This document shows positions 1,493 through 35,663 of a stretch of DNA of 64,000 bases, in pieces. Position 1 is the stretch's first letter, and each line of letters opens with the position of its first letter. The stretch covers positions 443,911 to 507,910 of IMG/VR virus record IMGVR_UViG_3300049793_000366; one strand, 5' to 3'. The position numbers were made by a program, and so were the translations under genes. The notes beneath the pieces are model-generated. The model was given only the letters and a program-made list of their open reading frames with translations. It was not told the origin of the DNA and searched no databases.

Positions 1493-1508
1493 AATTAAAC
1501 TGCCACAC
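1493..1508 (+). repeat. Isolated copy of the 16-bp GCCACAC repeat
   Basis: AATTAAACTGCCACAC just upstream of the serine recombinase. Confidence 0.7.
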
Positions 1509-1529
1509 CATTATTCGATATAATCAACT

Positions 1530-18836: not shown

Positions 18837-19082
18837 ATGAGAGGATTTTGTAAATGTAGAGTAACATTCAAAAAAGATATACACACCTACGTTGGTAACC
18901 AAATATATGAATACCGTATATATGGTAGTATGTATACCGTTGAGACACCATCACTGCTTAACCCAGATTTAAGTGTCGGGTATCAATTCAGTCAAAAAGC
19001 ATTTGATGAGCAATTTGATGAGTTTACCCAGCAACAAATAAGAGAAATGAGATTAGATACCGTATTAAAAGACAATGAGTAA
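18837..19082 (+). CDS. CIK-family protein with C-tag
   Basis: CKCR; IREMRLDTVL. Confidence 0.7.
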   Translation: MRGFCKCRVTFKKDIHTYVGNQIYEYRIYGSMYTVETPSLLNPDLSVGYQFSQKAFDEQFDEFTQQQIREMRLDTVLKDNE

Positions 19083-19341
19083 AGAATCACAACTAATAGA
19101 AGGCTATGAGAATTTCAAAGGCTTTGAAGTAAACTCTATTGTCATATGCGTAGATGCCAAAGATTGCATATCCATCAAAGAAGGTGATGAGTATACCGTA
19201 TTGAACCAACCACACTATCATAACATGAGAGGCGTTGGTGTAGAGGTTAGTAGTCCAGGTACTTCTAATTTTTATCATCCAGGTCGATTCATCAGTAAAG
19301 AAGAACTAAGAAATAAGAAAATCCAAACCATATTAGAATGA
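19075..19341 (+). CDS. CIK-like protein with C-tag
   Basis: VICVD; LRNKKIQTIL. Confidence 0.7.
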   Translation: MSKESQLIEGYENFKGFEVNSIVICVDAKDCISIKEGDEYTVLNQPHYHNMRGVGVEVSSPGTSNFYHPGRFISKEELRNKKIQTILE

Positions 19342-19640
19342 CTGTACAATTTCATAGAACAGACACCGAGAAGTTTATACTACTCATCTTCACTGGTGGA
19401 TCTCCGCTCGATAACCGCAAAGCTCTGGATAACTACCTAAGCGATTTAAAAGTTGATGATAACGGAGAATATGTAGATTATAACCGCTATGACTTCTGTG
19501 ATATCAAATACTATATGGATGTCTTATGCCTCTTATATAAGAAACCACACAGCTTAAACGATGAAGATTTTGTTGATTATAATAAGAACTATCCAACAGC
19601 ACTGAAAAGAATTAAAGGACTAAATAAATTACTGGTATGA
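19338..19640 (+). CDS. C-tag hypothetical protein
   Basis: KRIKGLNKLL. Confidence 0.65.
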   Translation: MTVQFHRTDTEKFILLIFTGGSPLDNRKALDNYLSDLKVDDNGEYVDYNRYDFCDIKYYMDVLCLLYKKPHSLNDEDFVDYNKNYPTALKRIKGLNKLLV

Positions 19641-19831
19641 GCCAACGAATGGAAGAATTTAACTACGTAAGTGGTGGGCATCACAATAAATTAATTGTGG
19701 TTGATATATTATATATGCTAAAGAAACAAATGCGAACAGAAGCTTTTCATAGACCAATTGAAATAGTATCAGACTCAAAAGAACTTCTTATAATCGCGGA
19801 TTATGTCAAAAACAATAAGATAAAATTCTAA
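19637..19831 (+). CDS. Hypothetical protein
   Basis: Coupled ORF. Confidence 0.6.
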   Translation: MSQRMEEFNYVSGGHHNKLIVVDILYMLKKQMRTEAFHRPIEIVSDSKELLIIADYVKNNKIKF

Positions 19832-20092
19832 ATGAAATGTATCTGTCATAACGATTTGCTTGAAGGAACAAGGTCAGCTTTCATCAAAGGTAACATATAT
19901 GAATATAGTATCTACAACAACGGTAAAACCATATCACTTGGTGGAACTTTCATTGACTTCGAAGGATTCGAATATGTGGCAGACAAACAAGCACTATCAA
20001 TTGATATGTTCACCCATTACTTTAGAGATTTAGAAGAACACAGAGATTTAACCATCAATACACTATTAGAATGGCAATGTACCAAGAAGTAA
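19832..20092 (+). CDS. CIK-family protein with C-tag
   Basis: MKCICH; HRDLTINTLL. Confidence 0.75.
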   Translation: MKCICHNDLLEGTRSAFIKGNIYEYSIYNNGKTISLGGTFIDFEGFEYVADKQALSIDMFTHYFRDLEEHRDLTINTLLEWQCTKK

Positions 20093-20322
20093 GAGATATA
20101 GTTTGCACATCATCCAAACTATACCCACAATATATTAAAGGTAAACACTATCGTGGTAACTTTAGGTTATATTGCTGGGATGTCGTAGATGAATACAATA
20201 ACATGATGAACTATGGTATAGATAAATTCAATGAGTATTTCACCGAGTTAGAAGAATTAAGAGATAATAAGATTAAAACAATATTAGATAATGAAGTTCA
20301 AACCAATATTCAGCATAGGTGA
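20071..20322 (+). CDS. CIK-family protein with C-tag
   Basis: IVCT; LRDNKIKTIL. Confidence 0.7.
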   Translation: MAMYQEVRDIVCTSSKLYPQYIKGKHYRGNFRLYCWDVVDEYNNMMNYGIDKFNEYFTELEELRDNKIKTILDNEVQTNIQHR

Positions 20323-20521
20323 CTTAGTATATGTGGACACCAATACAATAGCAACCATTCTAAGAACCCGCGCCAATATAGAATTTCTCATCGAATACGA
20401 AATGTCAAAGAAATACATCAATATGTCAGCTAAACGAAAATACTGGGTCTATTATGAAGTCTTGGTCAAATATAACACAGGTATCATACGCGAACAAAAG
20501 CTCAATAATCTATTACAATGA
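20291..20521 (+). CDS. C-tag protein (SH3-like start)
   Basis: FSIGDLVYV; IREQKLNNLL. Confidence 0.7.
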   Translation: MKFKPIFSIGDLVYVDTNTIATILRTRANIEFLIEYEMSKKYINMSAKRKYWVYYEVLVKYNTGIIREQKLNNLLQ

Positions 20522-20751
20522 AAGCAAAATGTATTAAACCAATCATAGATGAATTCGGAGACCATCAAATGGAACTAATACTGAATGAGAACTATGAATA
20601 TAGAATAATACTGACCGATAAACCGGCTGATAGGTTCATTTATAAACTCATCGTAAAAAATAAAGAATATTCATTAACAACAGAGTATTTCGATAGATAT
20701 CTACTCGACATAACCATTCATAGAGATAACCAACTCGATACACTATTATGA
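20518..20751 (+). CDS. CIK-family protein with C-tag
   Basis: MKAKCIK; HRDNQLDTLL. Confidence 0.75.
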   Translation: MKAKCIKPIIDEFGDHQMELILNENYEYRIILTDKPADRFIYKLIVKNKEYSLTTEYFDRYLLDITIHRDNQLDTLL

Positions 20752-21017
20752 GCAAGAAAGAAGAAATATCACTCATCTGTATAGAAGATATTGTAGACCT
20801 GTTCACCAAAGTCGCACAGTTTAAGAAAGGCATAACCTACAAAGCATTCTTAGACCCACTACACATTGTCTACATCTATAATGAATCAGGCGCACTCTTC
20901 CAAAAGTATAACCTGATGAATACCTATGAACACGATGAATATACAAAACACTTCGAGATACCCTGGAGACACCGCGATAATAAAATAAACAATATATTGG
21001 AAGAACATGGGAACTGA
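20748..21017 (+). CDS. CIK-family protein with C-tag
   Basis: LICIED; HRDNKINNIL. Confidence 0.75.
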   Translation: MSKKEEISLICIEDIVDLFTKVAQFKKGITYKAFLDPLHIVYIYNESGALFQKYNLMNTYEHDEYTKHFEIPWRHRDNKINNILEEHGN

Positions 21018-21243
21018 ATTAAGAATATGTCGGTGCGTCAATGATGCCTATATCGGTTACCGATTAACTATTGAATATAAATTCAGCGTGGTGTATGTAA
21101 ACCAACACGTAGATATCTATCGGGTCTATTTGGAAGATAGGTCAACCTTTAACCATTTCACCAAACTACAATTCAATAAATGCTTCATCGATTTAACCGC
21201 CATAGAAGAAAGAGATACTAACATTCAAAAAGTATTAGAGTAA
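21007..21243 (+). CDS. CIK-family protein with C-tag
   Basis: CRCVN; ERDTNIQKVL. Confidence 0.7.
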   Translation: MGTELRICRCVNDAYIGYRLTIEYKFSVVYVNQHVDIYRVYLEDRSTFNHFTKLQFNKCFIDLTAIEERDTNIQKVLE

Positions 21244-21464
21244 TGGAAAAGGAAGAAGAATTAATCATCCGGTGCATAAAAGACACACCCAGCTTTTTTA
21301 AAGATAAATGCTATAAAGCAGTTATCAATCATATAGACCACGAGATTAACATATTCAGTGAATATTTAAAGGTAGAATTTGAATATCCATCCTATTACTT
21401 CAATGAACATTTCCAATTAGAATGGCAACGCCGTGACCAAATTATAGACTCAATACTCAAATGA
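21243..21464 (+). CDS. CIK-family protein with C-tag
   Basis: IRCIKD; RRDQIIDSIL. Confidence 0.75.
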   Translation: MEKEEELIIRCIKDTPSFFKDKCYKAVINHIDHEINIFSEYLKVEFEYPSYYFNEHFQLEWQRRDQIIDSILK

Positions 21465-21721
21465 AAGCAATCTGTATTAAACCCATCATTGAACACATAA
21501 ACTGGGAAACCATCACTCTATCCGAAGGAGTCATATATGAGTATGAACTGATGATTGATACCGCCCAAGCCACCTTCGGAAGAGTCTATCAAGTTATGAT
21601 AAATAATAACCCATATAGTATGAAACCAGAATTCTTTAACAAACATCTTAAAACCATTGACGAACACCGAGAGAAACAATTAGACAAACTATTAAATGAA
21701 GATAAAAGCCATCTGTATTAA
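21461..21721 (+). CDS. CIK-family protein with C-tag
   Basis: MKAICIK; HREKQLDKLL. Confidence 0.75.
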   Translation: MKAICIKPIIEHINWETITLSEGVIYEYELMIDTAQATFGRVYQVMINNNPYSMKPEFFNKHLKTIDEHREKQLDKLLNEDKSHLY

Positions 21722-21947
21722 AACATTCAAAGTCGGCTATGGAATCAAAGAATCCAACTTCATCGAAGGGGAAATCTATGACTATGAACGACTACTCATC
21801 GGTATTATGAATAATGATACCAGAGAATATAGAATACATTCGGGTGATAACCATTTCAAATTAAACCCGCAATTCTTTAAACAACACCTGATGGACTTAG
21901 AACTATACAGAGAGAAACAATTAAAAGACGTATTGAATGAGCGATAG
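21696..21947 (+). CDS. CIK-family protein with C-tag
   Basis: KAICIK; YREKQLKDVL. Confidence 0.75.
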   Translation: MKIKAICIKTFKVGYGIKESNFIEGEIYDYERLLIGIMNNDTREYRIHSGDNHFKLNPQFFKQHLMDLELYREKQLKDVLNER

Positions 21948-22311
21948 AATGATACCAGAACAATTAGATACACTTATCTGTATTGAAGACTATTATGAAA
22001 AACTCACCTATGGTAACTATAAACTGAACATCCTATTCAAAAAAGGCAAACAATACATCGCCTATGAACTCAGAGGTATAGTCTATGTACTAAATGAACA
22101 AAGCCTATTCGTACAGTTTAACCTTCTCACCAGTAAAGAACTATCCGATTACAATAGACACTTTACCGTACTAAGTACACACAGAGAAACATTGATTGAT
22201 TCTATTATTACTAATAACATTGAGAAAGATGAAACGGTTAAAGAAAGCGAGCCGCAGGCGAGCTGTAGAGCTTCCGAACCCTTAAATTCATTAAATCCTC
22301 CGCGAGATTAG
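21937..22311 (+). CDS. CIK-family protein with C-tag
   Basis: LICIED; HRETLIDSII; 3' extension runs through a GC-rich hairpin. Confidence 0.7.
   Translation: MSDRMIPEQLDTLICIEDYYEKLTYGNYKLNILFKKGKQYIAYELRGIVYVLNEQSLFVQFNLLTSKELSDYNRHFTVLSTHRETLIDSIITNNIEKDETVKESEPQASCRASEPLNSLNPPRD
22246..22264 (+). other. GNA-triloop DNA hairpin with tandem GA mismatches
   Basis: AGC-GA-GCC-GCA-GGC-GA-GCT. Confidence 0.55.
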
Positions 22312-22333
22312 TCGAAATTAACCATATTCCACC

Positions 22334-22570
22334 ATGATAACATTTACCAAACAATGCATCTGTATAAACGACAAGAACCCAGTATCACAGGAACAAACCC
22401 TGTTCAGAAAAGGAACCATCTATGGCTACGAATTTATGACAGAAGGTATCTATAAAGACGAATACGTTCTGAGCATTAATACAATGGGTCTTCCACCAGA
22501 TATGTTCAACCACTATATGATGGACTTACAAGAATACAGAGAGAAACTACTAAACAACCTAACCGATTAG
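22334..22570 (+). CDS. CIK-family protein with C-tag
   Basis: QCICIN; YREKLLNNL. Confidence 0.75.
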   Translation: MITFTKQCICINDKNPVSQEQTLFRKGTIYGYEFMTEGIYKDEYVLSINTMGLPPDMFNHYMMDLQEYREKLLNNLTD

Positions 22571-22573
22571 AAA

Positions 22574-22792
22574 ATGGGCTATATTACCACCGTCATATGT
22601 ACCGAAACTGTTAAGAATATTACCATAGAGTATAAGAAAGGTCAACACTATGAAGCATACTTCTACCTCGATAAAGTTAGTATCAACCATAACAATACCT
22701 CGATAGAATATGAATGTGATGAATTTTTTAAAGAACACTTCAAACCACTCTATAAACACCGAGATAATCAAATCAATAACATATTAGATTAA
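22574..22792 (+). CDS. CIK-family protein with C-tag
   Basis: VICTE; HRDNQINNIL. Confidence 0.75.
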   Translation: MGYITTVICTETVKNITIEYKKGQHYEAYFYLDKVSINHNNTSIEYECDEFFKEHFKPLYKHRDNQINNILD

Positions 22793-23112
22793 TGTACACC
22801 GAAGAAGAATTAGAATATACCTGGCAAAACTATCATAAGAATCAAAAACATTGGTTCAAATGTATATGTATAAAATCATTCGGTATATACGAAGCCGGTA
22901 ACATATATGAATATAACATAAACAAAACAAATGTCACCGATACCTCAAACGGCTATAAATCATATATCAAATGGGATTTCTATGTAAAGTTCGAGAAATA
23001 CCCAAAACTATACACAGATACCAATATAGTAAGATATAACCAATTCATAGAATGTATGATAGATGTATCAAAATATAGAGAGAATCAAATCAATAACATA
23101 TTAGAACAATGA
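22792..23112 (+). CDS. CIK-family protein with C-tag
   Basis: KCICIK; YRENQINNIL. Confidence 0.75.
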   Translation: MYTEEELEYTWQNYHKNQKHWFKCICIKSFGIYEAGNIYEYNINKTNVTDTSNGYKSYIKWDFYVKFEKYPKLYTDTNIVRYNQFIECMIDVSKYRENQINNILEQ

Positions 23113-23342
23113 TTCAGATAGATTCATGTACAACCTGTCCAAATTGTGGTAATGGCTCATTATCAGAAGTTAAAGTATATCTAAATAAGAATGTACTTGG
23201 ACTAACATATAAGAAATACTCACATACTAAACAAGTATGCCTGTTCAACTATAAAACAAGCATGGGTATATGTAACTATGACTCAGATAATACATTAGAC
23301 GTTATAAGAGATAATAAACTTCAAACACTATTAGACCAGTAA
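23109..23342 (+). CDS. Zn-ribbon-like protein with C-tag
   Basis: CPNCG...C...C; IRDNKLQTLL. Confidence 0.7.
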   Translation: MIQIDSCTTCPNCGNGSLSEVKVYLNKNVLGLTYKKYSHTKQVCLFNYKTSMGICNYDSDNTLDVIRDNKLQTLLDQ

Positions 23343-23581
23343 TGATAAACACACTAATCAAACAAGGATTCGTCTATGATATGGAAGATAACCTCTGGTA
23401 TGATGAAAACATCTACCGTATCAAATATAAACTCAGAGTCAGTATTCTAAAACGTATAGACGGTTCTTATAAAGCTACACTATATACAGGTGGGTATAAT
23501 AACTCAATGACCATTAATAACTCATATGAATTAGAAGCCGCTATAAGAGATTCACAATTAGAACGATTAATGAAAGTATGA
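23342..23581 (+). CDS. C-tag hypothetical protein
   Basis: IRDSQLERLM. Confidence 0.7.
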   Translation: MINTLIKQGFVYDMEDNLWYDENIYRIKYKLRVSILKRIDGSYKATLYTGGYNNSMTINNSYELEAAIRDSQLERLMKV

Positions 23582-23820
23582 AAGTTATATGTATTAAGAA
23601 CTATAAACATACCGGCTTCGATATGATGTTCTTTATGGATAATTTATATGATGCTGATATATCCAAAGATATGGCTTATGTATGTAGCAATCAATACCTG
23701 ATGGGTAAACAAGTATCCTTTGGTATGTCCTATGATGAATTCTATGAACACTTTAAAGTATTAGCAGATTATAGAGAAGAACAAATTAATAACCTTCTTA
23801 TAGAAAACAAACATGATTAA
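23578..23820 (+). CDS. CIK-family protein with C-tag
   Basis: MKVICIK; YREEQINNLL. Confidence 0.75.
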   Translation: MKVICIKNYKHTGFDMMFFMDNLYDADISKDMAYVCSNQYLMGKQVSFGMSYDEFYEHFKVLADYREEQINNLLIENKHD

Positions 23821-24103
23821 TAAAATTATATGTATCAAAAGCTATGTACAAAAAGGTTCAATATCCTCTTATAGCTTTACTTTCTTAGAAGGACATACAT
23901 ATGAGTATAATCCATTAGAAGAGGTTGGTGGTGTGATAGTAACACTATATACAGGAGAATATAGGAACACACATAGAGTAGGATTCAATATTACCCGTGG
24001 TGAATTCTATGAACACTTTAAGATACTAAAAGATTATAGAGAAGAACAAATAGACAGCTTGCTTGCGAACGAAGTGAGCAGTCTGAATAATTTAAACAGT
24101 TAG
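23813..24103 (+). CDS. CIK-family protein with C-tag
   Basis: KIICIK; EFYEHFK..DYREEQI shared with upstream paralogue. Confidence 0.75.
   Translation: MINKIICIKSYVQKGSISSYSFTFLEGHTYEYNPLEEVGGVIVTLYTGEYRNTHRVGFNITRGEFYEHFKILKDYREEQIDSLLANEVSSLNNLNS
24064..24080 (+). other. GNA-triloop DNA hairpin with tandem GA mismatches
   Basis: TGC-GA-AC-GAA-GT-GA-GCA. Confidence 0.55.
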
Positions 24104-24115
24104 AACAATTACACT

Positions 24116-24334
24116 ATGAAGACAGTTTTATTATGTATGAAGAGTAATCACTATTCAGATAGACATAAACAAGAGTTTGAAAAAGGTAGATTATATAACG
24201 CACAAGTAGTCGATAATAGAGTCAAGATTACAGATGATTTAGGTAATACAAACTCATTCTCATTCATATATGTTTATCAGTATTTTGTAGATGCTGCTGA
24301 ATATAGGAAGGAACAGATAGATAAAATACTGTGA
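24116..24334 (+). CDS. CIK-family protein with C-tag
   Basis: LLCMK; YRKEQIDKIL. Confidence 0.75.
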   Translation: MKTVLLCMKSNHYSDRHKQEFEKGRLYNAQVVDNRVKITDDLGNTNSFSFIYVYQYFVDAAEYRKEQIDKIL

Positions 24335-24587
24335 AATGAGTTAAAATGTATATGCTAAATTTGACTGTTTTCGCAGATTTACATGACGTTTATGTGAAGC
24401 CTGTTTGCGGGAACTATTATAATGCCACACTTGTACCACCTTAGTTGTCAGTCTATGTCTAACCTTGTCAGCCAGTCAGAACCCGTCAGATTGTTCATAA
24501 CTTCTATTTTATCCACAATTTATGGACATAAGGTTGTTGATAACTTTCTATCAGTCTGACGGTAATCTTTTATTAAATTTAAACAAT

Positions 24588-24803
24588 ATGGAAACACCAA
24601 TCACTGATAAACAAATAGTTGAGTATTTAAAATACTTGAAGACCGAATTCACTGAACTATGTAAAACTCCGGATAGGAGTATAAAAGAAATGTCTTACCG
24701 TAGTGTATTACTTGAGATGTTTCAGATTGAGACTAACAATGAGAAACACTTCGATGTACTTAGTAAAACACTAAATGACTATCGTATATCAAAGCGTAAT
24801 TAA
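24588..24803 (+). CDS. Hypothetical protein
   Basis: METPITDKQ; stop codon lies inside a 16-bp repeat. Confidence 0.6.
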   Translation: METPITDKQIVEYLKYLKTEFTELCKTPDRSIKEMSYRSVLLEMFQIETNNEKHFDVLSKTLNDYRISKRN

Positions 24804-24880
24804 AATGCCACACCTCAAAGCCTTATTCGGTGAGCATTCAAATTATAATGCCACAGTCTGACGGAGTTAAAGTGCCACAC

Positions 24881-24899
24881 TGCTCGTCTCCGACTCGCA
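24881..24899 (-). other. GNA-triloop DNA hairpin with tandem GA mismatches
   Basis: Minus strand TGC-GA-GTC-GGA-GAC-GA-GCA, between two 16-bp repeats. Confidence 0.55.
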
Positions 24900-24932
24900 T
24901 TAAACTACCACACCTTTCGGACATATAATGGT

Positions 24933-25160
24933 ATGTTTCAATCTATGAATGAGTTAGAGGTAAAGGCTGACGGTATGTTATGCTACAATGGTGTAAAGCT
25001 TCTTAGTGTTGAGGCTTTGAGTGACTTTGTATCTCTAACTGGGTTTGAACCTTTACAGGCTTTACAGACGTACTATATAACCACTCAAACACATCAGAGG
25101 AATCAAAAGCTTGAGATTCTATTTGATGGAGTTAAAGTGCCACACCTCAAACCGTTATAG
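24933..25160 (+). CDS. C-tag hypothetical protein
   Basis: QRNQKLEILF. Confidence 0.65.
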   Translation: MFQSMNELEVKADGMLCYNGVKLLSVEALSDFVSLTGFEPLQALQTYYITTQTHQRNQKLEILFDGVKVPHLKPL

Positions 25161-25191
25161 GGAGAATAAGTTAGAAGTCTTGTTGAATTAA
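25126..25191 (+). CDS. Tag-only mini-ORF or gene remnant (21 aa)
   Basis: MELKCHTSNRYRENKLEVLLN; 22 nt identical to 27102-27123. Confidence 0.35.
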   Translation: MELKCHTSNRYRENKLEVLLN

Positions 25192-25246
25192 AATGCCACA
25201 CCTCAACGCCTTATCTGGTAAGGATTAGAATTAAAATGCCACACTT

Positions 25247-25471
25247 ATGTTTAATATAGGAGATAGAGTTAAAGAATTGGGTAGGGATTGTTATAGGGAT
25301 GAGCCTATTGAGATAATATCTACGCTCAAGGAGAATAAGCGATATCATTTAAAGTATTTGAATGTATTTAATGTACAGGGTACTAATATGTTATTCTGGG
25401 TTCATGAAGATGATATTATCTTAGACAAGGAGTATTATAGGGATAAGAAGATTAATGAGGTGTTGAATTAA
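25247..25471 (+). CDS. C-tag protein (SH3-like start) flanked by 16-bp repeats
   Basis: MFNIGDRVK; YRDKKINEVLN. Confidence 0.75.
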   Translation: MFNIGDRVKELGRDCYRDEPIEIISTLKENKRYHLKYLNVFNVQGTNMLFWVHEDDIILDKEYYRDKKINEVLN

Positions 25472-25482
25472 AATGCCACACT

Positions 25483-25902
25483 TTATCTTTCTCTATCAAC
25501 TTCCATTTTCATAATAGCCAGACATTCTTGAACATCTGCTACGATTTCATCAGCAGTAGCTTTGGTTGACTGCATGGTTTTCATAGACATTTCAATCATT
25601 CTGATGGAGCTTTGTAGGCTTTTAATAAGTCTAATCTCTTCTTCTCTTGCTATATCGAGACCTTGTTGTATACCTAACTGTACTGCACACGCCATAACCG
25701 ATTCTACGTGGCTTCTGCCCTGTTCTTTTCTGCTGTACTCTAAGTTGCGTTTATTGAGTTGTACATCGATGTTTTGGCTTGTGGCGAGTAATTTACTGGA
25801 TGTGAGCATAACACCGTCATATGCTTCGAACTTTTTATTAACGATGATTGCGTTATAGGCTTTCATAATGCCTTTCATAATATCGGGAAATGTATTTTTC
25901 AT
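25483..25902 (-). CDS. Hypothetical protein
   Basis: MKNTFPD; helical; AVQLGIQQG. Confidence 0.7.
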   Translation of the reverse strand: MKNTFPDIMKGIMKAYNAIIVNKKFEAYDGVMLTSSKLLATSQNIDVQLNKRNLEYSRKEQGRSHVESVMACAVQLGIQQGLDIAREEEIRLIKSLQSSIRMIEMSMKTMQSTKATADEIVADVQECLAIMKMEVDRER

Positions 25903-25913
25903 GTCTTGTTGTA

Positions 25914-26120
25914 TTAGAATATTGATGGGAATATTAGGTCTAAAGCACCTGCGAGATATAATAGTATCATTATAAGAAGAGATATGCCAATTTTCCAATT
26001 TCGCTCTCTTTTAAACATTTCTTTTGCTTCATCTGAATACTGTTCCATGAAGTTCAAGGAACTAAATATAACATATACTGTGAATATAAATAAGATGAGT
26101 ATTTGTATAAATAATTTCAT
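25914..26120 (-). CDS. Small two-TM membrane protein
   Basis: Two hydrophobic helices; downstream of promoter. Confidence 0.7.
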   Translation of the reverse strand: MKLFIQILILFIFTVYVIFSSLNFMEQYSDEAKEMFKRERNWKIGISLLIMILLYLAGALDLIFPSIF

Positions 26121-26163
26121 ATTATGATTAATTTATTAGTTGATATCTTTAGTGTATGGTTTG

Positions 26164-26195
26164 TAAATATACGGATAATATTCCGGATCTCCAAA
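26164..26195 (-). promoter_or_regulatory. Early promoter with dyad
   Basis: TTTGGAGATCCGGAATATTATCCGTATATTTA on -. Confidence 0.8.
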
Positions 26196-26233
26196 TGAAA
26201 ACAACTTAGATAGGGTTGTATCGTATAATTAAA

Positions 26234-26491
26234 ATGCCACACCAACCATATCATATGTTATTACCGAAGGTTCGAAATGTATCACCGAGTACATTGGGTC
26301 AGAATATACAGATTATTAACACTGCGTATATGATACCAATGCGAAAGTGTTGTGATTGTGGTAATGTGATTAATATAATAGATGATGAGTTTGAGACAAA
26401 GCCTCGTATGTTTTTGTGGGTTAAGTTGGAGACTGATTATAGGTGTTGTGTATGTATGCGTGATAATAAGATTCGTAAGATATTTAAGTGA
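26234..26491 (+). CDS. Zn-finger protein with C-tag
   Basis: CCDCG...FLW...CCVC-MRDNKIRKIF; paralogue of 42464; ATG within repeat. Confidence 0.7.
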   Translation: MPHQPYHMLLPKVRNVSPSTLGQNIQIINTAYMIPMRKCCDCGNVINIIDDEFETKPRMFLWVKLETDYRCCVCMRDNKIRKIFK

Positions 26492-26715
26492 TGTCTGGAC
26501 TTACTTGTATATGTAAAGCTGACCATGCTTATCGGTTTATCAAGGGTAGGACTTATACTTATATGATAATTAATGGGCGGTTTAGTGTTTTAAATAGGGA
26601 TGCTAAGACTTGGTATAACTTTCACGATGATAACTTCCATGATGATTCGGTTAATTTTCACTTATTTTTTGAGTCTATACGTGATTATAATCTAAATGAA
26701 TTACTGAGCGAATAG
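26488..26715 (+). CDS. CIK-family protein with C-tag
   Basis: TCICK; IRDYNLNELL. Confidence 0.7.
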   Translation: MMSGLTCICKADHAYRFIKGRTYTYMIINGRFSVLNRDAKTWYNFHDDNFHDDSVNFHLFFESIRDYNLNELLSE

Positions 26716-26716
26716 A

Positions 26717-26748
26717 TTTGGTAATACCGGACTTTATCAATATATTTG
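26717..26748 (+). promoter_or_regulatory. Early promoter
   Basis: TTTG-N20-TATATTTG, ATG at 26753. Confidence 0.75.
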
Positions 26749-26752
26749 AAAT

Positions 26753-26878
26753 ATGAAAGCATTCTTAAGAATAATCACTTTTTATAGAGTAAATGATGTA
26801 GACTACGTACCTAATGGGTGCTTAGGATTAATATTCTGGCTTATAGTGATAGGTATAGTATTAGCAATCGCGAATTAA
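26753..26878 (+). CDS. Small membrane peptide (41 aa, not in ORF track)
   Basis: MKAFLRIITF...GCLGLIFWLIVIGIVLAIAN; own promoter. Confidence 0.6.
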   Translation: MKAFLRIITFYRVNDVDYVPNGCLGLIFWLIVIGIVLAIAN

Positions 26879-26879
26879 A

Positions 26880-27137
26880 ATGCCACACCACTTCAAATGT
26901 ATATGTAAGAATGAGTATCTACAATCCGGTAGGGAAGATACTTTAGTTATCTTCATACTCAATGAGATATATCTGGTGGAGAATACCGCGAGTGGGAACT
27001 ACTTATTAACTGGTAATATCCGTAGTGGTGATAATATTTTGCGTGAAATAGTATCTTTAGATGATGTAGGCTTTAAACGCTATATGATGCACATAGACGA
27101 GTATAGGGAGAATAAGTTAGAAGCATTGCTTAATTAG
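26880..27137 (+). CDS. CIK-family protein with C-tag
   Basis: KCICK; YRENKLEALLN; ATG supplied by repeat. Confidence 0.75.
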   Translation: MPHHFKCICKNEYLQSGREDTLVIFILNEIYLVENTASGNYLLTGNIRSGDNILREIVSLDDVGFKRYMMHIDEYRENKLEALLN

Positions 27138-29518: not shown

Positions 29519-29911
29519 CTATTTATTAGACTTTTCAGCATTACAAACCGTACACATTGGTTGATAGTTATCGATGTGGTCGGGACCGCCTTTATCTCTT
29601 GCTATGATATGGTCTTTAGTCATAAGCACCTCTTCACCCTTTGAATTCACTGCGTATAGGTTGAGGTGATAAGCCAATGAAGCTTTATTATACTTATCGC
29701 GTTCTTTAGCGAAGTATTTACCCTTAGCACCACAGATAACACAATCAATTCCTTTTACTTTGAAGGTTTTATACCTATCAGAACCCAGCTTGATATCATC
29801 ACCATCTAAGACTATGATATCTCTTTTGGTATGATGCAGTTCAACAGATGATAGAATGAGTTGAATTGGATATGTTTCTTTACGATAGTATCTCTTTACT
29901 TCAGTTTCCAT
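29519..29911 (-). CDS. HNH endonuclease
   Basis: CVICG...TKDHIIARDKGGPDHIDNYQPMCTVCNAEK. Confidence 0.85.
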   Translation of the reverse strand: METEVKRYYRKETYPIQLILSSVELHHTKRDIIVLDGDDIKLGSDRYKTFKVKGIDCVICGAKGKYFAKERDKYNKASLAYHLNLYAVNSKGEEVLMTKDHIIARDKGGPDHIDNYQPMCTVCNAEKSNK

Positions 29912-34947: not shown

Positions 34948-35206
34948 CGGTCTACCAATAAAAACCTGCGTATGTATTAAGAACTACGCTAAACGAAACG
35001 ATACCTATCGCTATACCATCGGTGAGGTCTATAAGTATCAAGTAGTCAGTCATTATATAAGCCCTGATGTATGGCGTGTCTATACCACTGATGCAGACTA
35101 TGACTTCTATGAAGTATCAAAGGATCCATGCGAACCAAAGATAATTGAGTACTTTCAAGATATACAAACGAATAGGGATTCTAAACTTAAGAAGCTATTG
35201 AAATGA
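34940..35206 (+). CDS. CIK-family protein with C-tag
   Basis: CVCIK; NRDSKLKKLL. Confidence 0.75.
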   Translation: MINGLPIKTCVCIKNYAKRNDTYRYTIGEVYKYQVVSHYISPDVWRVYTTDADYDFYEVSKDPCEPKIIEYFQDIQTNRDSKLKKLLK

Positions 35207-35589
35207 CAGCACCCGAACTAATAGAGTATTTAGAGCGATTGGGATTCATTATGGATTCTTATACCAGTATGATGGAGTTCATCACCCTACATCTACGCGA
35301 TAAAGATATTGGTGCTAATGTGAATAACCTAAGTGGTGTATCAATAAGTATCTGTAAGAGTAAAGGAGTCTATCATCAACAGTATAGTGATAAGCCAAAC
35401 ATATTCAGTATTAAGTATGAGCTAACGGATCATATAGACTTCAATACGAAGATGCCCGTTAGAAGCCATCAGATGAATCACTATACAATAGATGGTGTGT
35501 TGGAGTTCCTCGTAGAGAATCGAATTGGTAAACCGGATGTATTAAGAGAAGCTATCATTGAATTAAACTGCCACAGGCTCTTGAATTAA
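35203..35589 (+). CDS. Hypothetical protein
   Basis: 3' end formed by 16-bp repeats. Confidence 0.7.
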   Translation: MTAPELIEYLERLGFIMDSYTSMMEFITLHLRDKDIGANVNNLSGVSISICKSKGVYHQQYSDKPNIFSIKYELTDHIDFNTKMPVRSHQMNHYTIDGVLEFLVENRIGKPDVLREAIIELNCHRLLN

Positions 35590-35663
35590 AATGCCACACC
35601 AACTAATTAAACTACCACATCCGAAACCCTTACTGGATAAGACTTAGAATTATAATGCCACAC
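35561..35663 (+). repeat. Cluster 2 of 16-bp GCCACAC direct repeats (4 copies)
   Basis: 35561, 35584, 35605, 35648; last pair 43 bp apart with CTTA-N5-TAAG spacer. Confidence 0.85.

What the first reader, a model, noticed from the sequence alone, without database searches (positions are those of the whole stretch)
25126..25191. Free-standing C-tag coding segment between two 16-bp repeats
Seen: TATAGGGAGAATAAGTTAGAAGTCTTGTTGAATTAA (25156-25191) encodes YRENKLEVLLN-stop, out of frame with the overlapping 24933 ORF. Its first 22 nt are identical to the tag of ORF 26880 (27102-27123). With ATG 25126 it forms a 21-aa peptide that is little more than the tag. Inference: either a trace of how tags are copied onto new genes, a deletion remnant, or a tag-only competitor peptide.
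Basis: partly seen in the sequence, partly recalled or inferred. Interest (0 to 1): 0.6.

Follow-up and report, generated by a model that had tools for sequence, protein, structure and literature searches.

The report
Gene stub between conserved junction motifs
The lone "tag" is the leftover tail of a deleted small gene in a fast-shuffling gene array of a giant soil phage; the stub itself is ordinary, but the conserved 17-base motif on either side of it marks gene junctions in a whole lineage of such phages.

Summary
Window 25156-25191 encodes YRENKLEVLLN-stop. Its first 22 nt equal 27102-27123, and this 22-mer occurs only twice in 508 kb. A second assembly is identical.

The "tag" is the C-terminal helix of a very large family of small phage proteins (beta-barrel plus helix). 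About 80 members lie in this genome and about 1000 clusters in public data, with no Pfam or PHROG entry.

The "16-bp repeats" are copies of a junction motif, (G)AATTAAAATGCCACAC. There are 16 copies here, all on one strand and all in this window. The same motif, in arrays, occurs in a 709-kb relative and in 14 other metagenomic contigs, although the genes there have diverged and been reshuffled.

Relatives carry intact tag-bearing genes where this genome has only the stub. The stub is a four-part mosaic of sequences found elsewhere in the array. It is the only tag in a short frame in this genome, and its 21-aa ORF is absent from both relatives that could be compared.

Best reading: a non-functional recombination/deletion scar in a cassette array that resembles the PeSL-mediated shuffling of T4-like phages. 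A tag-only competitor peptide is not supported. The motif's function, probably promoter-like, is inferred and not shown.

The parts
25156..25191 (+). Free-standing tag-coding stub, YRENKLEVLLN-stop. It is the 3' remnant of a tag-family gene. The first 22 nt are identical to 27102-27123; the last 14 nt plus the following motif are most like 25458-25481.
25126..25191 (+). 21-aa ORF (MELKCHTSNRYRENKLEVLLN). Its N-terminal part is simply the junction motif read in the 'ELKCH' frame. I do not take it for a gene.
   Evidence: The same 'ELKCHT' read-through of the motif is seen in relatives' genes. There is no ortholog in R or L054.
25131..25145 (+). Junction motif copy, variant GTTAAAGTGCCACAC. Its left flank (25121-25130) matches the flank of the 24866 copy. 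Its right flank (25146-25158, CTCAAACCGTTAT) matches the start of the 28-nt long-unit spacers, so it is a recombinant copy.
25187..25244 (+). 43-nt 'long unit': motif (25187-25201), 28-nt spacer, motif (25230-25244). The TAA at 25189-25191 is the stub's stop codon. The second copy ends 2 nt before the ATG of ORF 25247.
24933..25160 (+). ORF (75 aa) with a degenerate tag (QRNQKLEILFD). It reads through motif 25131 (GVKVPH...) and stops inside the stub. Its ortholog in the relative R ends cleanly with the tag YIRDEKIKIILE.
24799..24929 (+). Array of four motif copies (24799, 24842, 24866, 24899), then N10-TATAAT (24924-24929) 3 nt before ATG 24933. The array is conserved in relative L064, where a different gene follows.
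25247..25471 (+). Intact tag-bearing gene (74 aa, ...YYRDKKINEVLN). Its stop codon lies in motif 25467-25481.
26880..27137 (+). Intact family member (85 aa). Its start codon is the ATG of motif 26874-26888. Its tag (27102-27134) is the stub's closest relative. It was modelled as a small beta-barrel plus C-terminal helix.
26228..26242 (+). Motif copy in a divergent intergenic region, upstream of the + gene at 26234/26255.
35562..35663 (+). Second array of four motif copies at the end of a + gene block. ORF 35203-35589 reads through the first copy and stops in the second.
1494..1529 (+). Isolated motif copy (ATTAAACTGCCACAC), then N10-TATAAT and 5 nt before ATG 1530, in a divergent intergenic region.

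Best explanation
The 66-bp segment is a non-functional scar. It is the last 11 codons of a member of a huge paralogous family of small phage proteins, left when the gene body was lost by recombination or deletion among short dispersed repeats. The repeats involved are the roughly 33-nt tag-coding tails and a conserved 17-nt intergenic junction motif.

The setting is a hyperplastic array of small gene cassettes near one end of a 0.7-Mb contig of an uncultured soil megaphage. I infer a Bacteroidota host.

Shown:
- The stub is a mosaic of four pieces, each with a closer copy elsewhere in the array.
- Relatives carry intact genes at the corresponding place.
- The flanking motif is conserved base for base across diverged, reshuffled relatives.
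- The motif sits at gene junctions, supplying the upstream gene's stop codon (TAA) and often the downstream gene's start (its own ATG, or an ATG 1-2 nt after it).

Inferred:
- The motif is a cis-regulatory element, most likely a promoter or promoter-upstream element for short-leader or leaderless transcripts, possibly read with the phage's own sigma factor.
- Because many identical copies lie close together, the motif also serves as a substrate for homologous or illegitimate exchange. This adds, swaps and deletes cassettes, as PeSLs do in T4-like phages.
- The stub persists because it lies in the upstream signal region of ORF 25247, where further deletion would be costly.
For: - Tag family. 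An iterative HMM finds 49 paralogs in the genome. A PSSM finds 80 tag-bearing frames at 12 bits or more, while shuffled controls give at most 1 at that level. The profile search finds 1009 representative clusters elsewhere. The AF2 model has pLDDT 89, with the tag as helix 72-84.
- Uniqueness. The stub is the only confident tag in a frame of 50 aa or less.
- Mosaic. 25121-25145 matches 24856-24880 at 22/25. 25146-25158 matches 24814-24826 at 11/13. 25156-25177 matches 27102-27123 at 22/22. 25178-25201 matches 25458-25481 at 21/24.
- Motif distribution. All 16 copies are on the + strand and inside the window, with none elsewhere in 508 kb.
- Motif in relatives. The 709-kb relative has 17 copies on one strand, although orthologs are only 41-87% identical at protein level and gene order is scrambled. 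Fourteen further low-GC contigs carry 2-14 copies each, always on one strand.
- Junction role. L056 shows gene(tag)-motif-8 nt-motif-ATG-gene repeated.
- Intact genes in relatives at the stub's place.
- The array 24799-24913 is conserved in L064 but is followed by a different gene, with homology ending at the TATAA element.
- A second, unrelated stub lies between two intact family genes in L069.
- The sequence is identical in a second assembly.
Against: - No expression data exist. The only run holding this DNA is a DNA run kept as contigs. Neither silence of the 21-aa ORF nor promoter activity of the motif is shown.
- The stub keeps an intact tag reading frame and its own stop codon. This could mean it is very young, as I assume, or that it is maintained.
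- The 28-nt spacers of the 43-nt 'long units' align to the stub better than shuffles do, and long units of 43-44 nt recur in relatives. Stub-like spacers may therefore have a cis function of their own.
- The exact deletion event cannot be reconstructed, because no relative is collinear here.
- The motif matches neither the E. coli nor the Bacteroidota promoter consensus.
Confidence: 0.8

Rival explanations
1. The segment is functional as non-coding DNA or RNA. It would be a spacer within a tandem regulatory unit (motif - about 41 nt - motif - 28 nt - motif) upstream of ORF 25247, and its tag-like coding potential would be a historical accident.
For: - The stub's first 13 nt after the motif match the start of the long-unit spacers at 11/13.
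- Whole spacers align to the stub better than shuffles; 0-0.2% of shuffles reach the score.
- Doublets at 43-44 nt spacing recur in W, R and other contigs.
- TAT falls exactly 10 nt after the motif, as in the copies with TATAAT.
Against: - The 56-nt spacing of this pair is not one of the two preferred spacings, 23 and 43-44 nt.
- No consensus structure is found, and spacers show only a weak folding excess.
- The relative L054 manages with a single motif before the ortholog of ORF 25247.
Confidence: 0.12
2. The 21-aa ORF (or the 26-aa version from TTG 25111) is translated into a tag-only micro-protein. It would compete with full-length family members for whatever binds the C-terminal helix.
For: - The frame is open, with an ATG, an intact 11-residue tag scoring 13.8 bits and a proper stop.
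- The tag is a helix at the C-terminal end of the barrel in the model, so it could be a docking element.
Against: - No counterpart exists in R or L054.
- It is the only such frame in 508 kb.
- The ATG lies inside the 3' end of ORF 24933. In the sister motif copy (24856-24865, and in L064) the corresponding triplet is ACG.
- The N-terminal residues are only the motif read in another frame.
Confidence: 0.04
3. A +1 shift at the end of ORF 24933 (…CCG TTA TAG G…) joins the ORF to the stub, giving that protein a proper tag in place of its degenerate one.
For: - The stub lies in the +1 frame relative to ORF 24933 and overlaps its stop codon.
- ORF 24933's own tag is degenerate, whereas its ortholog in R has a canonical one.
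Against: - There is no slippery sequence that allows re-pairing (UUA to UAU).
- The product would carry two tags separated by motif-encoded residues.
- Nothing similar is seen in relatives.
Confidence: 0.02
4. Assembly artefact: a collapse or chimera at the short repeats.
For: Short repeats 56 nt apart are a classic place for mis-joins, and only one sample holds the sequence.
Against: - A second assembler gives the identical 6,258 bp.
- One 59-kb contig spans the stretch with no differences and even depth.
- The repeats (15-17 nt) are far shorter than reads or assembly k-mers.
Confidence: 0.02

Closest known systems
PeSLs (promoter-early stem-loops) of T4-like phages: mobile regulatory cassettes that mediate modular shuffling (PMC2839356, PMC4122927; read)
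   Same: - It is a short, highly conserved intergenic motif repeated many times.
- It is concentrated in hyperplastic regions full of small ORFans.
- The upstream gene's stop codon lies at its 5' edge and the downstream gene's start at its 3' edge.
- Related phages differ by insertions, deletions and replacements whose boundaries lie at the motif.
- Gene fragments are an expected by-product.
   Different: - The motif here is a 17-nt element without a recognisable sigma-70 or Bacteroidota -35/-10 pair.
- No stem-loop or terminator part could be shown.
- The motif often contains the start codon itself.
- It forms tandem arrays of up to 9 copies at 23-25 nt spacing.
- It is confined to one roughly 35-kb part of a 0.5-0.7 Mb genome.
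- Promoter activity and mini-circles are untested.
T4 MotA-dependent middle promoters: an activator box at about -30 plus a -10 element at fixed spacing (own knowledge)
   Same: Four copies in three phages have the arrangement [ATTAAACT(A/G)CCACAC]-N10-TATAA(T/A)-N3-5-ATG. That is a conserved upstream box at a fixed distance from a -10-like hexamer. The phage encodes a sigma-70-family protein.
   Different: Most copies lack the TATAAT. No MotA/AsiA-like genes were sought. The host and its promoter rules differ. Nothing is shown experimentally.
Multigene families near the ends of large DNA viruses, such as ASFV MGFs and poxvirus 'accordions' (own knowledge)
   Same: There are dozens of fast-diverging paralogs of small proteins in tandem arrays near one end of the assembled contig of a very large viral genome. 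Copy-number change occurs by recombination and leaves truncated members behind.
   Different: These are bacterial viruses, and the protein family is unrelated. Here a dedicated conserved junction motif separates many of the cassettes.

Membership tests
Gene remnant (3' stub) of the beta-barrel + C-terminal-helix family | Specific sequence homology to the 3' end of intact paralogs | tested here: met
   The first 22 nt match ORF 26880's tag at 22/22, and the 22-mer occurs only twice in 508 kb. The PSSM score is 13.8 bits, while shuffles give none at 14 bits and one at 12.
Gene remnant (3' stub) of the beta-barrel + C-terminal-helix family | Lacks the rest of the gene (no N-terminal domain, frame too short) | tested here: met
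   The stop-to-stop frame is 36 aa and gives 21 aa from the ATG. Family members are 62-202 aa.
Gene remnant (3' stub) of the beta-barrel + C-terminal-helix family | Intact gene(s) at the corresponding position in relatives, and the stub ORF not conserved | tested here: met
   R has three intact tag genes after the ortholog of ORF 24933. L054 has an ORF with a tag directly before the ortholog of ORF 25247. Neither has the 21-aa ORF. Caveat: the region is not collinear, so position is defined by flanking orthologs only.
PeSL-type mobile regulatory cassette | Conserved repeated intergenic motif concentrated in a hyperplastic region next to small ORFans | tested here: met
PeSL-type mobile regulatory cassette | Contains a host-type promoter (-35/-10) | tested here: inconclusive
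   The motif carries no host consensus. Four copies have N10-TATAA(T/A) just before a start codon. The host-type (TTTG...TAnnTTTG) promoters in the window are a different repeat.
PeSL-type mobile regulatory cassette | Stem-loop that acts as terminator or attenuator | tested here: not met
   RNAalifold predicts no pairs. Spacer folding energies average -3.1 against -2.0 kcal/mol for shuffles, and few are individually unusual. No terminator-like sites were found.
PeSL-type mobile regulatory cassette | Indel and replacement boundaries between related phages lie at the motif | tested here: met
   In W versus L064, the array is conserved and different genes follow the last copy. The W, L054 and R comparisons agree. 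These are a few cases, not a genome-wide statistic.
PeSL-type mobile regulatory cassette | Promoter activity and excised mini-circles | not testable with these tools
   The phage is uncultured, and only contigs of one DNA run are available.
Functional micro-protein (tag-only peptide) | The ORF is conserved in relatives or recurs within the genome | tested here: not met
Functional micro-protein (tag-only peptide) | Evidence of translation | not testable with these tools
   No RNA or ribosome data are available.
Iteron or centromere-like protein-binding array | Tandem direct repeats in one orientation at regular spacing | tested here: inconclusive
   All copies lie on one strand, with spacing peaks at 23 nt and 43-44 nt. 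The spacers are partly homologous to one another, so the regular spacing may reflect descent rather than helical phasing.
Iteron or centromere-like protein-binding array | Adjacent initiator or partition gene, AT-rich unwinding region | not tested
   Neighbouring ORFs have no family assignment.

The most novel reading that the evidence does not exclude
The 17-nt element (G)AATTAAAATGCCACAC is a portable gene-junction cassette of a lineage of roughly 0.7-Mb megaphages. A single conserved site would supply the stop for the gene before it and the start or promoter for the gene after it. A dedicated phage factor (its sigma factor, an activator or an RNA-binding regulator) would read it. Its many copies would drive continual swapping, duplication and deletion of members of a family of 80 or more proteins per genome. 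The free tag and the 28-nt 'long-unit' spacers would be successive decay stages of collapsed cassettes.
Probability: 0.35. Interest if true: 0.6.

Novelty: new variant of a known kind. Interest (0 to 1): 0.35.

Why it matters
The stub itself matters little. It is a pseudogene fragment of the kind expected wherever paralogs recombine. Its value is as a visible footprint of the process.

It led to three things that appear undescribed in the libraries searched:
- A protein family with about 1000 clusters and about 80 copies in one phage genome, absent from Pfam and PHROGs.
- A junction motif conserved base for base across diverged megaphages.
- Evidence that gene content in this region turns over at these junctions.

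If the motif is a promoter or regulator site, it gives a handle on gene regulation in uncultured megaphages. It would also extend the PeSL idea, regulatory cassettes as engines of modular evolution, beyond T4-like phages.

Tried and rejected
- Megablast of 22-28 kb against GenBank phages found no match.
- The 16-mer scan of IMG/VR gave only single, chance-level hits.
- Pfam and PHROGs on ten window proteins and on ten foreign family members gave nothing significant.
- Pfam found nothing on six large proteins of the genome. PHROGs found a tail sheath and only weak matches on one other of the six.
With ORF 22792 it found no relative in viral contigs.
- The word search with ORF 24933 returned only the protein itself.
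- A T7-like RNA polymerase was considered because the stub contains TATAGGGAGA. PF00940 was not found, but the control was silent too, so this is uninformative. The RNAP beta subunit was not found.
- Sequencing runs: one DNA run, kept as contigs, with no variants or joints at the locus. The two listed joints are repeat cross-matches.
- A stem-loop in the long units was rejected as unproven. Rfam gave no match. No intrinsic terminators were found. The sigma-70 pattern scan was uninformative.
- Foldseek against PDB gave only weak SH3-like matches, with E at least 0.06 and TM about 0.45. The ESM Atlas gave only unnamed viral clusters.
- Intragenic deletion between the 5' and 3' ends of a 26880-like gene was considered. 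The left flank fits the long-unit spacers better (11/13), so the idea stays unproven.
- The literature search for the motif string returned only unrelated primer coincidences.
- The metagenome scan also returned about 14 contigs, with higher GC, from gut and other assemblies. They carry an unrelated tandem repeat that shares only the 13-mer and were set aside. None of these contigs was taken for human DNA. Two are labelled as human-gut metagenome assemblies; these were only screened for GC and motif positions.
- No complex prediction was run, because no binding claim is made.
- All reading was by table 11; nothing suggested another genetic code.

Full report
**Where the window lies**

The window is the last 64 kb of a 507,910-bp IMG/VR record. 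That record is part of a 711,805-bp JGI soil-metagenome contig. G+C is 33%. The genome encodes a contractile-tail sheath. A related contig of 709,085 bp exists in NCBI. I therefore take this to be a roughly 0.7-Mb megaphage rather than a prophage, but the first 204 kb of the contig were not examined. A repeated 32-nt element of the form TTTG-N20-TATATTT(G/A) lies just upstream of many genes. From my own knowledge this matches the Bacteroidota promoter consensus, and my host inference rests on that alone.

**The observation**

- 25156-25191 reads YRENKLEVLLN-stop, in a frame other than that of ORF 24933-25160.
- ATG 25126 gives a 21-aa ORF.
- The first 22 nt equal 27102-27123. This 22-mer occurs only twice in 508 kb, and the next best match is 17/22.
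- The pair ranks in the top two of 14,535 tag pairs.
- A Logan assembly of a public run is identical over 6,258 bp. One contig spans the stretch without differences. The run may be the source sample.

**What the 'tag' is**

The motif (F..hF....[YH]R[DE]xx[IL]xx[IL]L) is the C-terminal helix of a paralogous family of 60-200-aa proteins.
- An iterative HMM finds 49 members in the genome.
- A position matrix for the 11-residue core finds 80 frames at 12 bits or more. Shuffled controls give at most one at that level. Of the 80, 39 lie in the last 58 kb of the record.
- N-terminal parts are too diverged for BLASTP. They share K-x-ICIK...G..Y.Y.
- A profile search of 1.84 billion representatives finds 1009 clusters at E of 1e-3 or better, nearly all 65-115 aa.
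- Neither Pfam nor PHROGs holds the family.
- AlphaFold2 with a 130-sequence alignment gives a confident model (pLDDT 89). It shows a small beta-barrel, a short helix, and the tag as helix 72-84. PDB matches are only weakly SH3-like.

'Tag' is thus mostly the conserved tail of one expanded family. Whether it docks on a common partner is unknown.

**What the '16-bp repeats' are**

They are copies of (G)AATTAAAATGCCACAC.
- In the 508-kb record there are 16 copies, all on the + strand and all in the window: 1494, eleven between 24416 and 26874, and four at 35562-35649. None occurs elsewhere, and a reversed-sequence control gives none at up to two mismatches.
- The 709-kb relative (R; loci L045, L050) has 17 copies on one strand within 5.8 kb. 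These include nine in tandem at 23-25 nt spacing. Yet orthologous proteins in this region are only 41-87% identical and gene order is scrambled.
- A metagenome scan for motif doublets found 14 further low-GC contigs with 2-14 copies each, never on both strands.
- Over about 104 non-redundant copies, positions -1 to +14 are nearly invariant (measured on the 33 copies in W and R). Spacing peaks at 23 and 43-44 nt.
- The last copy of a group is typically followed by a long ORF. That ORF starts at the motif's own ATG in 13 cases or 1-2 nt after the motif in 8 cases.
- Upstream genes often end in the motif's TAA.
- Contig L056 shows the pattern cleanly: gene(tag)-motif-8 nt-motif-ATG-gene, repeated.
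- Where an ORF reads through a copy, the motif stays intact. Examples are ELKCHT in L056 and L070, VKVPH in ORF 24933 and ELNCH in ORF 35203. The constraint therefore acts on the nucleotides.
- Four copies in three phages have [ATTAAACT(A/G)CCACAC]-N10-TATAA(T/A)-N3-5-ATG. They are at W 1494, W 24899, R L050:14890 and L064.
- Two copies sit in divergent intergenic regions, where a + strand promoter is needed.
- The phage encodes a sigma-70-family protein.

These points make a promoter-type element my first guess (about 45%). An RNA-level signal for translation start, processing or regulator binding (about 30%), or another protein-binding or recombination site (about 25%), are not excluded. Two arrays face convergent genes, at 25467 and 35649, which fits a promoter less well. 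No stem-loop, Rfam family or terminator was found. The motif string does not appear in the searchable literature in any relevant context.

**Relatives at the stub's position**

- In R, the ortholog of ORF 24933 (L045:457-651) ends with an intact tag, YIRDEKIKIILE-stop.
- It is followed by three intact tag genes (648-899, 911-1186, 1183-1497).
- The tail and motif of the last of these match both the stub (84%) and the tail of ORF 25247 (89%).
- In the closer relative L054 (82% nt identity in ORF 25247), the ortholog of ORF 25247 is preceded by one motif copy and by an ORF ending ...LKLRDMKLDSILN-stop.
- In L064, which is 84-91% identical, the four-copy array 24799-24913 is conserved. Motifs are better conserved than spacers. 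A different gene follows the last copy, and homology stops at the TATAA element.

So gene content turns over at these junctions.

**Anatomy of the stub**

The segment 25121-25201 is a mosaic.
- The left flank and the unusual GTTAAAGTG motif variant match 24856-24880 at 22/25.
- The 13 nt after the motif match the start of the 28-nt long-unit spacers at 11/13.
- The next 22 nt match ORF 26880's tag at 22/22.
- The last 24 nt match the tail-plus-motif of ORF 25247 at 21/24.

ORF 24933 lost its own stop in the process. It now runs through the motif and ends inside the stub. The three 28-nt spacers of the 43-nt 'long units' in this genome align to the stub better than shuffles do; 0-0.2% of shuffles reach the score. 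They may therefore be older, more eroded stubs. This is an inference.

Genome-wide, the stub is the only confident tag in a frame of 50 aa or less. One other stub was found in a relative, at L069:502-550 (EFRQSKLDIIL, 15.5 bits). It lies between two intact family genes and overlaps the next gene's start.

**Explanation**

The most likely reading (0.8) is a non-functional scar. Recombination among the dispersed tag-coding tails and junction motifs removed a gene body and left its last 11 codons next to the junction that serves ORF 25247. The 22-nt identity with ORF 26880's tag points to a recent exchange with that gene or a close copy of it.

Rivals:
- A cis-acting spacer role for the segment (0.12).
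- A translated tag-only peptide (0.04).
- A +1 shift that extends ORF 24933 (0.02).
- An assembly artefact (0.02).

**Comparison with known systems**

The closest described system is the PeSL of T4-like phages (PMC2839356, PMC4122927). PeSLs are conserved promoter/terminator cassettes in hyperplastic regions. They carry the upstream stop and the downstream start at their edges, and recombination between them swaps and deletes ORFans.

The present element shares location, junction role and association with indels. It fails or leaves open two defining features, a host-type promoter and a stem-loop. It also differs in containing the start codon, in forming long tandem arrays and in being confined to one region. 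I therefore say that it works like a PeSL, not that it is one.

**Verdict**

The finding is real but ordinary as an object: a gene fragment. The interest lies in its surroundings, namely an undescribed, very large small-protein family and a base-for-base conserved junction motif in megaphages. Function is inferred throughout, because no expression data exist for this uncultured phage.

Noticed in passing
window 26163-26196 (- strand promoter sense); also 28083, 34130, 36719, 37453, 38322, 48860, 51741, 55113, 55721, 3586; + sense at 26717-26748: There is a second repeat family of about 32 nt, at least 11 copies. On the gene strand it reads TTTGGTRATCCGGAATATTATCCGTATATTT(G/A). That is a Bacteroidota-type -33/-7 promoter with a palindromic core (CGGAATATTATCCG), ending 3-40 nt before start codons. 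It is also present in the 709-kb relative. These are probably host-polymerase promoters with an operator.
   Followed up: partly
whole record G000; JGI contig Ga0497410_0000003 (711,805 bp); NCBI JAWVHH010000009.1 (709,085 bp): IMG/VR classes the 507,910-bp record as a provirus. The parent contig is 711.8 kb and a related contig is 709.1 kb. Together with a tail sheath gene and very few Pfam hits on the largest ORFs, this suggests a roughly 0.7-Mb megaphage lineage, near the largest phage genomes known.
   Followed up: partly
proteins P0008-P0152; window 18837-27137 and elsewhere: The small beta-barrel plus C-terminal-helix family has 1009 representative clusters at E of 1e-3 or better, but no Pfam or PHROG model. 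One hit (P0100, 1890 aa) matches the profile in 7 stretches, so the domain also occurs as tandem repeats in a giant protein.
   Followed up: partly
L069:502-550: There is a second free-standing tag (GCEFRQSKLDIILCNS-stop, 16-aa frame, 15.5 bits) in a related contig. It lies between two intact family genes, is not flanked by the junction motif, and overlaps the ATG of the next gene.
   Followed up: partly
L054:528-764: This ORF starts at a motif ATG. It carries the family's N-terminal 'ICIR' only about 30 residues before its tag (...VKNGIICIRY...LKLRDMKLDSILN). It may be an internally deleted member, a decay stage intermediate between a whole gene and a stub.
   Followed up: no
window 35203-35589 and 24933-25160: Two ORFs read through a junction motif copy in the frame without a stop, and end only at the next copy or just after. 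Doublets spaced 23 nt apart (2 mod 3) would provide stops in all three frames.
   Followed up: partly
G000:C1:112839-113045 (outside the window): A phage-encoded sigma-70 region-2 protein lies in a 209-aa open frame (63 bits). No RNA polymerase beta subunit was found in the record. It is a candidate reader of the junction motif.
   Followed up: no
window 29519-29911 (-): An HNH endonuclease ORF (Pfam hit on record) lies 4 kb from the motif-rich region. It may be a homing endonuclease.
   Followed up: no
window 22574-22792 and 22792-23112: The tags of these adjacent paralogs share a 23-nt identical run, the longest among all tag pairs. This points to recent tandem duplication or gene conversion. 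A related 531-bp NCBI contig (L042) has the second gene at about 85% nt identity with a different upstream neighbour.
   Followed up: partly
L051-L053, L058-L063, L066, L067, L073, L075, L078, L079, L081: About 14 contigs with higher GC, from gut and other metagenomes, matched the doublet pattern only through an unrelated tandem repeat (…GGATTAAAATGCCACAAAAATACCGAA…). This is a coincidence of a 13-mer and has nothing to do with the phage motif.
   Followed up: partly
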